Shown here piece after piece: positions 5,010-62,065 of a stretch of 64,000 nucleotides of DNA. Source of the stretch: Octopus bimaculoides. Its lineage: Eukaryota. The notes under the pieces were generated by a model. It searched no databases and was not told where the DNA came from. It saw only the letters and a program-made list of their open reading frames with translations. The first letter of the stretch is position 1. Each line of letters opens with the position of its first letter. The stretch lies in contig NC_068993.1 of assembly GCF_001194135.2 (NCBI RefSeq), forward strand, positions 17,064,073 to 17,128,072, in the 5' to 3' direction. A program made the translations under genes and the position numbers.

Positions 5010-5063
5010 ATGCGAGTTTCTCTATCCAGAGGAGTAACTGTTAGCAATCATGGATCACTTTAG
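5010..5063 (+). promoter_or_regulatory. Out-of-frame upstream ORF overlapping the receptor start codon
   Basis: ATG at 5010 reads MRVSLSRGVTVSNHGSL* and stops at 5063, 14 nt into the main ORF (main ATG 5050). Confidence 0.6.
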
Positions 5064-5134
5064 CAGACACTTCATGAGATGGTTGCTCCTTCTATTACTA
5101 TTACCATGGACCAATTGCATCTCTTTCAGTCGTG
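5050..5134 (+). CDS. Class I cytokine receptor (gp130/CRLF1/Domeless-like), first coding exon: signal peptide
   Basis: Acceptor tttctctcccttttcAG ends at 5007 (exon starts 5008). ATG at 5050 has a strong context (atcATGg). Translation is MDHFSRHFMRWLLLLLLLPWTNCISFSR, with a 7-Leu hydrophobic core. Donor G|GTAAGT at 5135 is phase 1 and joins in frame (G+TT=Val) to the Ig exon. Not in the ORF track because it is short. Confidence 0.85.
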
Positions 5135-5393
5135 GTAAGTTATTCATTTTCTTTTCCTTGGGATTGATTATAATCTTTGATAATTCCTTTTTTTTTATTT
5201 TTTTATTCTGATTTATAGATCTCAAGATACGTGATTTATTTTCTGCATAAATTTTTACTTGCATATTTTTGTGTGTGTATAAGTGTGTATTTGTCCATAC
5301 AATACTATGTGTGTGTTTCTGTGCATGCTCACATTCCTGTTTTTATATGTATATACAACTGTGTGTGTGTGTGTGTGTGTGTATGAGTGTGTG

Positions 5394-5442
<49 letters not shown>

Positions 5443-5453
5443 TAGTGTGCATG

Positions 5454-5491
<38 letters not shown>

Positions 5492-5510
5492 AGTATATGT
5501 GTATATATAA

Positions 5511-5543
<33 letters not shown>

Positions 5544-57519: not shown

Positions 57520-59203
57520 GTCACTCTGTGCTTCCAATTCTGACTTGATTGCACCATTCTTTTCCATCTTGACCCAAATTGCTTAACTAAATCACCGTCC
57601 CATCGTCATGGAGGCCTTGCAAGTGGCCTTTTCTGATCTCTACATCCTGTCATAAAGAGCCATTGTTTCAGAATGAAATAATTAGGTGTGACTGTTCGGA
57701 TACTGATCATTTGGGACTGCTGACTGCACTTTCAATTTATTTTAGCCACAGTACTCTTCGGCACTGGAGGCAAAAACCACAGGCACACATGTACAAAAAG
57801 ATACATATATAGATTGCTACCAAATTCACTCACAAGGCTTCGGTCAGCCCAAGGCTATAGTAGAAGACACTTGCCCAAGGTGCTGCGCAGTGGGACTGAA
57901 TCCAGAACCATGTGGTTGGGTAGTAAGCTTCTTAGCACACAGTCACATCTGCAATTCATATTTGTGATTGGCTTCTGTATAGTTTCCATCTACTACACTC
58001 CACCCACAAGGACATGCTAGAAGACACTTGTCCAAGATGCTATTCAGTGGACGTGAACCCCAGAACTGTATCATCTTGAAATGAGAGCTTCCTAATCACA
58101 CAGCCATGTCTGCTGTTTCATTTCTCATTATATTTGCTTGTCATGGTTGGTCAAAATACCTACAGTTCTCACTACCATCTTATACAGTAGCATTATTACA
58201 AATCTCCCCATTGACAGCACACAAAGAGCTTTTGTGTTACATTATTCTTCTAATCTTAATCAACCTACTTCAATAAATAAAGAGGTTACAACTTTTACTT
58301 TATGGTCGAATAGATTACAAAAGAAAGGGGACACCTAGCTGCCAAACAGCAAATCCTTTCTGTATGAGAACACATTTTACTTTTGTCTTTATTTTTCCAT
58401 ACTTGAGTGAGTGGAAAGCTTTTTTGTTTTTTGATTTTTTGGGAAGTGAGGTGTTATTTTTCTATGTTGTTATTTTTTTTTTTTTTTTTTTTTTTTTTAC
58501 TGGACACCCTTCCTACTCACCTATTAATCACTGACCTGTGAAGTTAGGGTTGTCAGAGTAATACCTGCTACCAACAAGCTAGCAAGCCAAGCAGTCAGTC
58601 ACACAGAATGAACACAGAATTATCTGTTTTGTTCAGGTGTCAAATATATAGATTTGAATCCTGACTCTTGTGATTAGCATATCCTATTCTTTTACTCTTT
58701 TACTGGTTTCAGTCATTTGGCTTTGCAGCCATGCTGGGGCACTTACCTTCAAGAGTTTAGTTGATATAATATCAACCACAGTACTTATTTTAGTCTAGTA
58801 CATATTTTATTAATTTCCTTTTGCTGAACCACTAAGTTACAGGATAAAGGGGTACAATATGATGAGACTATTATATTGTAATGTTGACATAAACACAAAT
58901 ATGGACTTGGGCATTCATGCACACACACATACACACACTCAGAGGACATATAAGTTTGTTTATTTCTGTTCATTTTACATCTGTTTTCCCATGCTAGCAC
59001 ATGTTACATGACTATATTATTAAGATGTTGTTTACAGCTTGATATTCTTCCTGTTTCTCAAATGTGTGCCAGCAGGCAGTTTGTTGCCTGAGAAATGACA
59101 GCTACATCACCACTTGTAGCTCAGTAATTTTCAGAGAAGCACAAATGTAAACAATGTGTGTGTGTTGTTTATGCATGTGTCACATGCACACATGCGTGCA
59201 CGT

Positions 59204-59241
<38 letters not shown>

Positions 59242-60168
59242 GAATGATATTCATTTGCAGCCATCGTGCAATGTCCAGGCAGGGAGACACAAACATATAT
59301 GATGAGCTTCTTCCAGTTTCTGTCGACCAAATCTACTCACAAGACTATGGTTGGCTTGAGGCTATAATAGAAGACACTTGTCCAAGATTCCATGCTGTGC
59401 AATTGAACCTGAAACCATGTGGTTTGGAAGTACACACACACATGCACGCGTGCGTGCACACACCCCCACACACACACACATGACAAGCTTTGTACAGTTT
59501 CCATCTATCAAATTTAATCACAAGGTAATTGGTTGACCCCAGGGTTATAGTAGAAGATGAGATGTCAGATCTGTGAGACTGAATCTGAAAACACATGGCT
59601 GCAAAGCAAACTTCTTAACTACATGGCACAAGTATTACTCTGATTAAGAAGTTCACTTCCCGACCACATGATTTCAGGTTCAGCTCTACTGCGTGGAACA
59701 TTGAGCACGTGTCTTCTACTATAGCCTTGGACTGATCAAAGCCTTCTAAGTGGGTTTAGTTGATGGAAACTGAAAAAAATGCCTGTCAGGTGTGTGTGTG
59801 TGTGTGTGTGTCATTGTCTTGATATCTCATTTGTTGTAAATAGATGTTATTTGTTTCCAATATTTTGTGCAAACATGCCTGGTTATGGAGAAATGATACC
59901 TTACATGAAAATTGGTATGGATTAGCAACAGGAAGGGCATCTGGCTATTGAAAAATTTGCCTCAATAAACTCCATCCAACCCATGCAAGCATGGAAAAGT
60001 GGATGTTAAAACAGTGATGAGGATGATGACAGCCATGCCTGCATCTTTATATATTTACATATACAACCCATGCTAACATGGAAAACAGACATTAGATAAT
60101 GATGATGATGTCATTATCGTCATCATTGTTGTTCATCTGCCAAATTGTGTTCACTATTAGTCAACCCG

Positions 60169-60412
60169 TGGAGGCGTGTGGCCTAGTGGTTAGAGTGTCA
60201 GCACCATGATCGTAAGATTGTGGTTTCGATTCCTGGACCAGGCGACGCGTTGTGTTCTTGAGCAAAACACTTCATTTCACATTGTTCCAGTCCACTCATC
60301 TGGCAAAACTGAGTAACACTGCAATGGACTGGCGTCCCATCCAGCTGGGGAACACATACGCCATTGAAATTGGGAAACTGGGCCCATGAGCCTGGCTTGG
60401 CTTTAAAAGGGC
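60169..60412 (+). mobile_element. tRNA-derived SINE family D, full length with A-rich tail
   Basis: tggcctagtggttagag (A box), ggtttcgattcct (B box), CORE-like centre and gggcgcaaaaaaaa end. Confidence 0.8.
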
Positions 60413-61569
60413 GCAAAAAAAAAAAATAATCAGTCAACCCAGAAATGTAGTAGAAGACACTCATTCAAGGTGTTGTGCATTGGCATTAANNNNNNNNNNN
60501 NNNNNNNNNNNNNNNNNNNNNNNNNNNNNNNNNNNNNNNNNNNNNNNNNNNNNNNNNNNNNNNNNNNNNNNNNNNNNNNNNNNNNNNNNNNNNNNNNNNN
60601 NNNNNNNNNNNNNNNNNNNNNNNNNNNNNNNNNNNNNNNNNNNNNNNNNNNNNNNNNNNNNNNNNNNNNNNNNNNNNNNNNNNNNNNNNNNNNNNNNNNN
60701 NNNNNNNNNNNNNNNNNNNNNNNNNNNNNNNNNNNNNNNNNNNNNNNNNNNNNNNNNNNNNNNNNNNNNNNNNNNNNNNNNNNNNNNNNNNNNNNNNNNN
60801 NNNNNNNNNNNNNNNNNNNNNNNNNNNNNNNNNNNNNNNNNNNNNNNNNNNNNNNNNNNNNNNNNNNNNNNNNNNNNNNNNNNNNNNNNNNNNNNNNNNN
60901 NNNNNNNNNNNNNNNNNNNNNNNNNNNNNNNNNNNNNNNNNNNNNNNNNNNNNNNNNNNNNNNNNNNNNNNNNNNNNNNNNNNNNNNNNNNNNNNNNNNN
61001 NNNNNNNNNNNNNNNNNNNNNNNNNNNNNNNNNNNNNNNNNNNNNNNNNNNNNNNNNNNNNNNNNNNNNNNNNNNNNNNNNNNNNNNNNNNNNNNNNNNN
61101 NNNNNNNNNNNNNNNTTTTTTTTTTTTTTTTTTTTTTGAATAATGGATCTTGATGCAGATAAAATGATTATTTATAGTTTTGAGTTAAATAGGAATAAAT
61201 GAAGACGTACTAAAAGTTTTTTAGTAGGACAAATGATAAATTGCACATGTAGCTTTGTTTGTTACTGATTCAGTCATCATTGATCCACAGTAACATGATG
61301 CATTCAATTGCAAGTCACATTACGTTTATCATTGATTGATCAGTGTTGACACAGGTCCAAGCAATCAAAGATTCTGCTTGTACTGCAAAAATGCTCTTCA
61401 ATGACCACCCACTGTGCCTAGTTGCCCAGAATGCACTGATTATTGCTTGTGTTCACATGACTGTGCTGTGAGCCTGCTTATTTTTTTTATAAGTAATTAC
61501 AAACTTGTGCCCTTCAACATGGGACCAGTGAACAGAAAAAGTATAAAGGCACTTGCTCCTAACAAACAA

Positions 61570-61710
61570 TGCAGATGAGTGTCTTCTTTATAGGAAAAGG
61601 TAGAGATGGTCAATAAAATATATGATGGTGGAAGCCTTACTGCTGGCAAGCCATGTGTTTGGTGTCAATGAATCTACCTTTCATTCCATTTACATGTGTG
61701 GAGATGATTC
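61570..61710 (+). mobile_element. Tigger/pogo transposase N-terminal (CENP-B-type HTH) fossil
   Basis: SL*EKVEMVNKIYDGGSLTAG [frameshift] VFGVNESTFHSI matches the Tigger LxEKVE..G.S....FGVNESTI..I motif. Confidence 0.65.
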
Positions 61711-61928
61711 TTTTATCACTGATTTTATTTTTTTTTTTTAGAACTAAAACCCCCCATGATAAATGAGGATATTCCTGAGTGTTTAACATGAGCTTATTTG
61801 AATGACCTCCAAACATTCATAACAGCGATAAGACAATAATAAAAGAAAGTTGTAATTGTTGTTGTTTTTCTCTCCTCTTCTTTATTTTTCTCTCCTTTCA
61901 AATTTTCTTTATTATATTCTAATTAAAG

Positions 61929-62065
61929 TAAAACCAGCTAAACTGCACAGCATCAAGTGCCAACCATATAACAGTAGTTGTACCAACTTATCATGGAACC
62001 ATACTCATCCACTGAAATGCAGAGTTCGTTACCACTCACAGTGGGATCCTTCCAATATTTGGGAG
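61929..62065 (+). CDS. Class I cytokine receptor, second FN3 of cytokine-binding module (D3), N-terminal half
   Basis: Acceptor ttctaattaaAG ends at 61928. The 137-nt phase 1-0 exon encodes (V)KPAKLHSIKCQPYNSSCTNLSWNHTHPLKCRVRYHSQWDPSNIWE. The junction gives the I-V-K-P hinge typical of the D2/D3 boundary. Donor GAG|GTAAGT at 62066. The gene continues beyond the window. Confidence 0.88.

What the first reader, a model, noticed from the sequence alone, without database searches (positions are those of the whole stretch)
5050..62065. Invertebrate gp130-type cytokine receptor with vertebrate-like Ig + cytokine-binding module
Seen: five exons across 57 kb splice in frame into 274 aa, giving a signal peptide, an Ig-like domain, an FN3 with C-x9-C-x-W and a second Cys pair, an IVKP hinge and a second FN3, with seven N-x-S/T sequons. 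Established: Ig followed by a cytokine-binding module is the layout of vertebrate gp130, G-CSFR and CRLF1, which signal through JAK/STAT. Inference: this is a cephalopod JAK/STAT receptor or soluble co-receptor. I do not know of a characterised helical-cytokine ligand for such a receptor in molluscs, so it may mark an uncharacterised cytokine system.
Basis: partly seen in the sequence, partly recalled or inferred. Interest (0 to 1): 0.75.

Follow-up and report, generated by a model that had tools for sequence, protein, structure and literature searches.

The report
Octopus gp130-type cytokine receptor gene, 5' part

Summary
Five + strand exons (5050-5134, 24505-24798, 43033-43162, 56882-57057, 61929-62065) have canonical AG/GT borders and splice in frame to 274 aa with seven sequons. 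No exon or splice site touches an N gap; all gaps are intronic. The spliced product matches residues 1-274 of RefSeq XP_052828310 (uncharacterized LOC106881088, Octopus bimaculoides, 1244 aa) at 100% with no gaps. It is 92% identical to the O. sinensis orthologue, and the O. vulgaris orthologue is annotated "cytokine receptor domeless".

The full protein has a signal peptide, an Ig domain, a cytokine-binding module, further FN3 domains, one TM helix and a 547-aa tail with a Box1-like LPSLPDEP motif. A profile of molluscan orthologues hits human gp130 best (E=7e-27) and collinearly over D1-D6. An AlphaFold model of Ig+CHD matches gp130 D1-D3 and CRLF1 first. Intron phases 1-1-2-1-0(-1) follow the cytokine-receptor pattern and are conserved in Argonauta.

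Differences from gp130: WSxWS is reduced to WSDKT, and no YxxQ is present.

The identification is supported. The soluble co-receptor alternative is not supported for the annotated product. Molluscan gp130/IL6R-like receptors are already in RefSeq and in a 2026 survey, so novelty is low. The ligand remains unknown.

The parts
5050..5134 (+). Coding exon 1: start codon and signal peptide (aa 1-28 plus the first base of codon 29). Ends in phase 1.
   Evidence: Identical to residues 1-28 of XP_052828310. The N-terminus MDHFSR is shared by O. sinensis, O. vulgaris and Argonauta.
24505..24798 (+). Exon 2: complete Ig-like domain (aa 29-126), a symmetric phase 1-1 exon. Conserved Cys46 and Cys99.
   Evidence: Pfam ig 25.9 bits (cut-off 21.8) and Ig_3. 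AF2 of this exon alone gives an all-beta fold, pLDDT 68. HMMER scan: 95% identity to the O. sinensis protein over aa 30-126.
43033..43162 (+). Exon 3: first half of CHD domain 1 (aa 127-169) with C137-x9-C147-x-W149. Phase 1 to 2.
   Evidence: The cysteines and Trp are invariant in six molluscan sequences. The Argonauta orthologue has the same 130-nt exon.
56882..57057 (+). Exon 4: second half of CHD domain 1 (aa 170-228) with the second Cys pair C176/C184. Phase 2 to 1.
   Evidence: Exons 3+4 together score LIFR_D4 26.8 bits (cut-off 25), and also hit TSLPR_D1, IL6Ra-bind and CRLF2_D1. Argonauta has the same 176-nt exon.
61929..62065 (+). Exon 5: VKP hinge and first half of CHD domain 2 (aa 229-274). 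Phase 1 to 0. The gene continues beyond the window.
   Evidence: Argonauta has the same 137-nt exon, followed by a 148-nt phase 0-1 exon that carries the WS-type motif. No later exon of the protein is in the window.
5135..61928 (+). Introns 1-4 (19,370, 18,234, 13,719 and 4,871 nt). They contain all the N gaps within the finding, SINE-like repeats and transposon remnants.

Best explanation
The window carries the promoter-proximal 57 kb of Octopus bimaculoides gene LOC106881088, namely its coding exons 1-5.

Shown: the gene encodes a 1244-aa type I membrane protein built like vertebrate gp130 (IL6ST). It has a signal peptide, an Ig-like domain, a two-domain cytokine-receptor homology module with two conserved disulfides in D1, further membrane-proximal FN3 domains, one TM helix and a long cytoplasmic tail.

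Inferred: by analogy with gp130 and Domeless, a secreted ligand is bound at the Ig domain and at the elbow of the homology module. Receptor chains are brought together, JAK held on the membrane-proximal proline motif (LPSLPDEP) is activated, and tail tyrosines are phosphorylated and recruit STAT.

The ligand is unknown. The window itself encodes only the ligand-binding N-terminal part: Ig, D1 and half of D2.
For: Identity of the gene:
- The spliced exons match XP_052828310 residues 1-274 at 100% and the O. sinensis orthologue at 92%.
- The Argonauta orthologue is 77% identical, and two cephalopod transcript-derived proteins are 47-49% identical.

Family:
- Pfam ig and LIFR_D4 score above their cut-offs on the window's own exons.
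- phmmer of the 274 aa finds CRLF1 best (E=0.003) and then gp130.
- The profile of six molluscan ectodomains finds human gp130 at E=7e-27. The alignment is collinear: profile positions 26-474 to gp130 7-440, and 548-649 to gp130 492-591.
- LIFR, IL12RB2, LEPR, CRLF1 and IL31RA follow. Non-cytokine FN3 proteins match only FN3 parts.
- A shark 'IL-6 receptor subunit beta-like' protein is hit at E=7e-19.

Fold:
- The AF2 model of aa 25-332 of the O. sinensis orthologue has pLDDT 76.8.
- The top ten Foldseek PDB hits are all gp130 D1-D3 or CRLF1, with E about 1e-18 and TM 0.57-0.64.

Gene structure:
- Phases 1,1,2,1,0 in the window continue as 1 in Argonauta, with later FN3 domains mostly split 1-0-1.
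- The related class II receptors have conserved phases 1-2-1-0-1-0 (PMC8863823).
- The Ciona gp130-like gene shares the GP130 splice structure (PMC1963337).

Signalling parts:
- There is a single TM and a 547-aa tail.
- The proline motif is invariant in five cephalopod sequences and aligns with scallop MPHVPLPP.
- Ten tyrosines are conserved among the cephalopod sequences.

Expression: an uninterrupted 1241-codon ORF lies on a 4.6-kb RNA-derived contig.

JAK and STAT are reported in Mollusca (PMC13203501).
Against: - The WSxWS hallmark is degenerate: WSDKT in octopus and LSKEV in scallop.
- No YxxQ STAT3-type docking site occurs in any cephalopod tail.
- No ligand, JAK binding or STAT activation has been shown for any molluscan member.
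- Everything downstream of aa 274 rests on the RefSeq model and on orthologues, not on this window.
- No formal phylogeny was made.
Confidence: 0.85

Rival explanations
1. The gene encodes a receptor of gp130 build that does not signal through JAK/STAT in the vertebrate way. It could be a decoy or modulatory chain like Drosophila Latran, or a receptor that uses other adaptors through its conserved C-terminal T-D-L tail.
For: There is no YxxQ in the cephalopod tails, and the WS motif is degenerate. The conserved C-terminus ...ITPDLPTTDL, and the scallop ...ATEL, resemble a PDZ ligand. Drosophila has a non-signalling short receptor that lacks YXXQ (PMC2914635).
Against: The tail is long (547 aa). 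It keeps a Box1-like proline motif at the expected distance from the membrane, and ten tyrosines are conserved among the cephalopod sequences. STATs of the 5/6 type, which molluscs are reported to have (PMC13203501), do not need YxxQ (my own knowledge).
Confidence: 0.12
2. The product is a soluble Ig+CHD co-receptor of the CRLF1 / IL-6R-alpha / p40 type.
For: The single-sequence PDB search ranks CRLF1 first. A 323-aa Ig+CHD-only protein is annotated in the limpet Patella. Alternative transcripts were not examined.
Against: All annotated octopus, Argonauta and scallop products continue into further FN3 domains, a TM helix and a tail. The four O. bimaculoides RefSeq accessions share one 1244-aa protein. 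With the profile, gp130 scores 97 bits against 51 bits for CRLF1.
Confidence: 0.04
3. The protein is an Ig/FN3 cell-adhesion or receptor-phosphatase-type molecule rather than a cytokine receptor.
For: FN3 parts also match PTPRF, contactins, neogenin and DSCAM. Contactin FN1-FN3 appears in the fold search at rank 20.
Against: Those matches cover only generic FN3 stretches. The domain with paired cysteines hits only cytokine-receptor D1 families. The whole ectodomain is collinear with gp130. TM-scores are 0.57-0.64 for gp130 against 0.44 for contactin. The two-exon split of each CHD domain with phases 1-2-1-0-1 is the receptor-family pattern.
Confidence: 0.02
4. The exons are chance open frames, a pseudogene, or an artefact of scaffolding across gaps.
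For: The draft scaffold has 13 gaps, the sequence is AT-rich and repeat-rich, and the first word-index protein search found nothing.
Against: There is an exact match to a RefSeq protein from a different assembly. Orthologues with the same exon sizes exist in Argonauta. An mRNA contig exists in another cephalopod. No stop or frameshift is present, and no exon is near a gap. The result was a false negative of the index, as searches show.
Confidence: 0.01

Closest known systems
Human gp130 / IL6ST (group 2 'tall' class I cytokine receptor)
   Same: - Same order of parts: signal peptide, Ig domain, CHD, membrane-proximal FN3 domains, TM, and a long tail with a membrane-proximal proline motif.
- Best profile hit (E=7e-27), collinear from the Ig domain (D1) into the membrane-proximal FN3 domains.
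- Best fold hits.
- Four D1 cysteines plus the C-x-W motif.
- Each CHD domain is split into two exons.
   Different: - About 20% sequence identity.
- WSDWS is reduced to WSDKT.
- No YxxQ sites.
- Extra cysteines in D2.
- A conserved C-terminal TDL.
- Ligand and partner chains are unknown.
Molluscan 'IL-6 receptor subunit beta-like' / 'LIFR-like' RefSeq proteins (Argopecten, Pecten, Mizuhopecten, Patella, Haliotis), and the 'IL6R traced to Mollusca' of PMC13203501
   Same: This is the same family. The scallop protein is 31-32% identical at E=9e-99, with the same architecture and an almost identical D1 motif: DIDCRVYNWE[KN]MTC[TV]WDLG.
   Different: The cephalopod orthologues have a longer tail (547 against about 410 aa) and WSD instead of LSK. 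Haliotis has a duplicated Ig+CHD unit, and the Patella entry is Ig+CHD only. The 2026 paper does not mention cephalopods.
Drosophila Domeless
   Same: It is an invertebrate class I receptor with a CBM, three FN3 domains, a TM helix and a JAK/STAT-coupled tail. The O. vulgaris orthologue is annotated with this name.
   Different: Domeless has no N-terminal Ig domain. It has a 200-aa LDHR region that is absent from vertebrate receptors, and it has a YXXQ site (PMC2914635). Its CHD is encoded by a single exon (PMC1963337). The octopus gene has the Ig exon, a four-exon CHD and no YxxQ.
Ciona gp130-like receptor (Liongue & Ward 2007)
   Same: It is an invertebrate receptor with gp130 topology and a GP130-like splice structure (PMC1963337).
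   Different: It is from a deuterostome. No direct sequence comparison was made here.
Human CRLF1
   Same: It is the best single-sequence PDB hit, aligned over Ig + D1. It is among the top fold hits.
   Different: CRLF1 is secreted and has no further FN3 domains, TM helix or tail. With the profile it scores well below gp130.

Membership tests
Class I cytokine receptors, gp130-type (group 2) | CHD domain 1 with two disulfide pairs, including C-x9/10-C-x-W | tested here: met
   C137-x9-C147-x-W149 and C176-x7-C184 lie in window exons 3-4. They are invariant in six molluscan sequences. Pfam LIFR_D4 scores 26.8 bits against a cut-off of 25.
Class I cytokine receptors, gp130-type (group 2) | N-terminal Ig-like domain directly before the CHD | tested here: met
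   Exon 2: Pfam ig 25.9 bits against a cut-off of 21.8. It aligns to gp130 D1 in the profile search.
Class I cytokine receptors, gp130-type (group 2) | WSxWS motif near the C-terminal end of CHD domain 2 | tested here: inconclusive
   The motif is not in the window. In the full RefSeq protein the homologous position reads FWSDKT, aligned to gp130 YWSDWS. Scallop has FLSKEV, and only the Ser is invariant. It is a half motif, and variants of the motif are known in accepted family members (my own knowledge).
Class I cytokine receptors, gp130-type (group 2) | Significant, collinear sequence similarity to gp130 over the ectodomain | tested here: met
   The profile of molluscan orthologues hits 8d6a_A at E=7e-27, spanning the Ig domain (D1) into the membrane-proximal FN3 domains. 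A shark gp130-like protein is hit at E=7e-19.
Class I cytokine receptors, gp130-type (group 2) | Three-domain Ig+CHD fold like gp130 D1-D3 | tested here: met
   The AF2 model has pLDDT 76.8. Foldseek ranks gp130 and CRLF1 chains 1-10, with TM 0.57-0.64. The model is of the O. sinensis orthologue, not of the window protein itself.
Class I cytokine receptors, gp130-type (group 2) | Each CHD domain encoded by two exons, with intron phases 1-2-1-0-1 | tested here: met
   Window phases are 1,(1),2,1,0. Argonauta completes the series with 1. The pattern is documented for class II receptors in PMC8863823. For class I receptors it rests on PMC1963337 (a conserved GP130-like splice structure) and on my own knowledge.
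Class I cytokine receptors, gp130-type (group 2) | Membrane-proximal FN3 domains, a single TM helix, and a cytoplasmic Box1 proline motif | tested here: met
   This was tested on the full-length RefSeq protein, not on the window. Pfam finds fn3 at residues 561-654. There is one TM at about residues 667-689, and LPSLPDEP follows about 22 residues after it, invariant in five cephalopod sequences. JAK binding itself was not tested.
Class I cytokine receptors, gp130-type (group 2) | YxxQ STAT3 docking sites in the tail | tested here: not met
   No Y-x-x-Q occurs in any of the five cephalopod tails. Two occur in scallop. This feature is specific to gp130/Domeless and does not define the superfamily.
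Class I cytokine receptors, gp130-type (group 2) | Binds a four-helix-bundle cytokine and activates JAK/STAT | not testable with these tools
   No molluscan ligand is known (PMC13203501). An experiment is needed.
Domeless (Drosophila-type) | CBM at the N-terminus without an Ig domain; LDHR region; CHD in a single exon | tested here: not met
   An Ig exon is present, the CHD is split over four exons, and the ectodomain is collinear with gp130. The Domeless features are taken from PMC2914635 and PMC1963337.
Soluble group 3 receptors (CRLF1, IL-6R-alpha-like) | Ends after the CHD, or has only a short tail | tested here: not met
   The annotated product has further FN3 domains, a TM helix and a 547-aa tail. 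Alternative isoforms were not examined.

The most novel reading that the evidence does not exclude
The cephalopod gp130-type receptor may be an orphan whose ligand is an unrecognised lophotrochozoan cytokine, helical or otherwise. Its half WS motif, its lack of YxxQ and its conserved PDZ-ligand-like C-terminus may mark a signalling mode that differs from vertebrate gp130 and from Domeless. Finding that ligand would open a molluscan cytokine system.
Probability: 0.3. Interest if true: 0.6.

Novelty: already known. Interest (0 to 1): 0.25.

Why it matters
The result shows that the raw-sequence reader can correctly assemble and name a receptor from five small exons spread over 57 kb of gapped draft sequence. 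Biologically the gene is already in RefSeq, though labelled 'uncharacterized' in O. bimaculoides and O. sinensis. Its family has been noted in molluscs. The added value is modest and has three parts:
- a justified name (gp130-type, not Domeless-type) for the cephalopod gene;
- a list of what is conserved: Ig+CHD, the intron phases, the Box1-like motif and the C-terminal TDL;
- a list of what is not conserved: WSxWS and YxxQ.

The open question remains what ligand drives such receptors in lophotrochozoans. It can be approached with this ectodomain, but nothing in this window answers it.

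Tried and rejected
- The word-index homologue search with the 274-aa product returned nothing. This was a false negative, because the HMMER scan with exon 2 alone found the orthologue at 95% identity. The index also missed the octopus proteins when queried with the profile.
That search and the first structure job therefore used exon 2 only.
- The bacterial promoter/terminator scan around exon 1 is irrelevant for a eukaryote.
- A search for WSxWS in all six frames of the window found only one chance match, in an intron at 42443.
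- The scallop protein has no genomic record in the look-up. The O. sinensis gene spans 125 kb, so no DNA was returned.
- My splice mapper could not place the Argonauta exons after exon 12, around the TM region. The map is therefore reliable only for exons 1-11.
- Literature searches for cephalopod cytokine receptors or for 'IL-6 receptor subunit beta' in octopus found nothing specific.
- A search for the class I intron-phase rule found explicit phases only for class II receptors.
- Pfam gave no name for the presumed LINE-like ORF fragments.

Full report
**What the window is.** The window is 64 kb with 36.6% G+C. It has 13 runs of N and is rich in microsatellites and short interspersed repeats, so it is a draft eukaryotic scaffold.

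**Checking the exons.**
- Exon 1: an ATG at 5050 with A at -3 and G at +4 opens a signal peptide that ends at a GTAAGT donor after 5134.
- Exon 2: 24505-24798, an Ig-like domain.
- Exon 3: 43033-43162, carrying CRVYNWEKMTCTW.
- Exon 4: 56882-57057. A scan for an exon of the required phases between exon 3 and the last exon gave one sensible candidate, carrying the second cysteine pair and ending ...SALI.
- Exon 5: 61929-62065, beginning VKP.

All borders are canonical. The phases are 1, 1, 2, 1, 0. The joined sequence is 822 nt = 274 aa with seven sequons.

**The gaps.** None of the 13 gaps touches an exon or a splice site. The closest is 410 nt from exon 1, and every gap inside the finding is intronic. 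Whether a coding exon could be hidden in a gap, or the scaffold mis-joined, is settled by the comparison below.

**Finding the gene elsewhere.**
- The first word-index search with the 274-aa product found nothing.
- That found a 1240-aa protein with 95% identity over its residues 30-126.
- This protein is XP_029644049, 'uncharacterized protein LOC115218400' of Octopus sinensis.
- Its 90% cluster also holds XP_052828310-313, 'uncharacterized protein LOC106881088' of Octopus bimaculoides (1244 aa).
- The same cluster holds CAI9731568, 'cytokine receptor domeless' of O. vulgaris, and two fragmentary models from the old O. bimaculoides assembly.
- My spliced 274 aa equals residues 1-274 of the O. 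bimaculoides protein at 274/274 with no gap. It is 92% identical to the O. sinensis protein.

The window is therefore O. bimaculoides. The five exons are the first five coding exons of an annotated gene, no exon of that product is lost in a gap, and the rest of the gene lies beyond position 64000.

**Independent support for the gene structure.**
- The Argonauta hians orthologue (77% identity) was retrieved with its genomic locus.
- Its first exons are 88, 291, 130, 176, 137 and 148 nt, with outgoing phases 1, 1, 2, 1, 0, 1.
- Three of these exon lengths are identical to those in the window.
- Most of the later FN3 domains are again split into two exons (1-0-1).
- The series 1-2-1-0-1 for the two-domain binding module is the pattern documented for the related class II cytokine receptors (PMC8863823).
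- A GP130-like splice structure is reported to be conserved among class I receptors, including the Ciona gp130-like gene. By contrast, the Domeless module is a single exon (PMC1963337).
- A 4.6-kb contig assembled from an RNA run (SRR6517992) carries an uninterrupted 1241-codon ORF for a 49%-identical cephalopod homologue. The gene is thus transcribed and spliced in this form in a relative.

**What the protein is: sequence evidence.**

| Query | Best matches |
|---|---|
| Window exon 2 (Ig), Pfam | ig 25.9 bits (cut-off 21.8) |
| Window exons 3+4 (D1), Pfam | LIFR_D4 26.8 bits (cut-off 25); weaker TSLPR_D1, IL6Ra-bind, CRLF2_D1 |
| 274 aa, phmmer against PDB | CRLF1 (E=0.003, over Ig + D1), then gp130 |
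| Profile of six molluscan ectodomains, against PDB | human gp130 E=7e-27; LIFR 3e-18; IL12RB2 2e-15; LEPR 2e-14; CRLF1 8e-13 |
| Same profile, word-index search | shark 'IL-6 receptor subunit beta-like' E=7e-19 |

The gp130 alignment is collinear: profile positions 26-474 match gp130 residues 7-440, and 548-649 match 492-591. That runs from the Ig domain (D1) into the membrane-proximal FN3 domains. Phosphatase and adhesion proteins match only generic FN3 stretches.

**What the protein is: fold evidence.** An AlphaFold2 model of residues 25-332 of the O. sinensis orthologue was built with a six-sequence alignment. It has mean pLDDT 76.8. Its ten best Foldseek matches in the PDB are all gp130 D1-D3 or CRLF1, with E about 1e-18 and TM 0.57-0.64. 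A contactin FN1-FN3 fragment first appears at rank 20 with TM 0.44.

**The full-length protein.**
- It has one TM helix (about residues 667-689) and a 547-aa tail.
- About 22 residues after the membrane lies DNLPSLPDEPLYYDDE. This is invariant in five cephalopod sequences and aligns with scallop MPHVPLPP. A shark gp130-like protein has NVPDP in the same place.
- Ten tail tyrosines are conserved among the cephalopod sequences.
- The C-terminus ...ITPDLPTTDL is invariant.

**Departures from gp130.**
- At the position of gp130 YWSDWS the octopus has FWSDKT and the scallop has FLSKEV, so the WSxWS hallmark is only half kept.
- No Y-x-x-Q site exists in any cephalopod tail.

**Departures from Domeless.** Domeless has no Ig domain, has a 200-aa region absent from vertebrate receptors, and carries a YXXQ site (PMC2914635). 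The octopus protein is built like gp130, not like Domeless, despite the label on the O. vulgaris entry.

**How it most likely works.**

Shown: this is a membrane receptor with a gp130-type ligand-binding head, and the head is the part encoded in this window.

Inferred: ligand engagement at the Ig domain and the module elbow, receptor dimerisation, JAK activation on the proline motif, and STAT recruitment to tail phosphotyrosines. JAK and STAT genes are reported in molluscs, but no IL-6-type ligand is (PMC13203501). In shrimp, non-helical ligands of Domeless have been described (PMC5645147, PMC9195186).

Given the missing YxxQ and the degenerate WS motif, I give about 0.12 to a non-canonical or modulatory role. 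I give about 0.04 to a soluble form as the main product.

**Novelty.**
- The exact protein is in RefSeq.
- Relatives in scallops, limpet and abalone are already named IL-6 receptor subunit beta(-like) or LIFR(-like).
- A 2026 survey traces this receptor type, with signal peptide, Ig, IL6R domain, FN3 domains and TM, back to Mollusca (PMC13203501).
- I found no paper on the cephalopod gene itself.

The finding is therefore a correct re-identification of a catalogued but functionally uncharacterised gene. It is of low novelty and modest interest.

**Limits.**
- Everything beyond residue 274 comes from database models of the same gene and its orthologues.
- The fold and profile tests used orthologues, because the spliced window protein could not be submitted.
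- No phylogeny and no species-specific RNA evidence could be produced here.

Noticed in passing
window, about 25 sites on both strands (for example 33168-33316, 39128-39277, 45291-45440, 47632-47779, 62319-62468): A SINE-like repeat of about 150 bp occurs about 25 times at 75-97% identity. It is often next to (TA)n or (TG)n microsatellites and next to the N gaps. It gives the recurring pseudo-ORF '...SVSVYQIHSQGFGRPEAIVEDTCPRCHAVGLNPEPCGW'.
   Followed up: partly
window 34604-35334 (+), intron 2: This is a remnant of a mariner/Mos1-type transposase. Pfam HTH_48 hits at E=7e-16 on 34604-34819. A further ORF at 35008-35334 looks like the transposase C-terminus but has no Pfam hit.
   Followed up: partly
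window 14127-14690 (+) and 51887-52129 (+): ORF fragments share a '...G(R)PRKTWDEV...' motif and are interrupted by a stop. They resemble the C-terminal part of non-LTR retrotransposon ORFs from memory, but Pfam gave no hit.
   Followed up: partly
window 20268-20912 (+), intron 1: This is a 214-codon open frame made almost only of D, E, G and Y repeats (GEYEDDDDD units). It is a coding-looking minisatellite and not part of the receptor.
   Followed up: no
window 5006-5062: Just upstream of the start codon there is a polypyrimidine-AG (…cccttttcag at 4999-5008) and an out-of-frame ATG at 5010. The ATG opens a 17-codon uORF that overlaps the main ATG. This may be a 5'UTR exon boundary and a small regulatory uORF.
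   Followed up: no
window 54137-54252 (+), intron 3; protein P0055 (A0A0L8FUD6): The old O. bimaculoides model of this gene lacks exon 1. It carries an extra 'CSVDRINWNPRRHKQQSANNNIKAHDLVT' insertion that is absent from the RefSeq protein. A very similar repeat-derived frame ('CSVDRINWNPRRRKRR') lies in intron 3 of the window. The insertion is probably an intronic repeat wrongly taken as an exon.
   Followed up: partly
full-length proteins P0052, P0001, P0048-P0051, P0046 (outside the window): The molluscan receptors end in [ST]-x-L (TDL in cephalopods, TEL in scallops, TKL in abalone), preceded in the cephalopod and scallop sequences by a conserved 'LPAHYF/VPAHFY'. This resembles a PDZ-binding tail, which gp130 is not known for.
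   Followed up: partly
proteins P0046 (Haliotis asinina) and P0045 (Patella vulgata): The abalone relative has the Ig+CHD unit duplicated in tandem, as in LIFR and LEPR. The limpet entry is only Ig+CHD (323 aa), so it may be a soluble form or a partial model.
   Followed up: no
tools: The word-index protein search missed a 100%-identical RefSeq protein when queried with the 274-aa product. It again missed the octopus sequences when queried with a profile built from them. The exhaustive HMMER scan found them.
   Followed up: yes
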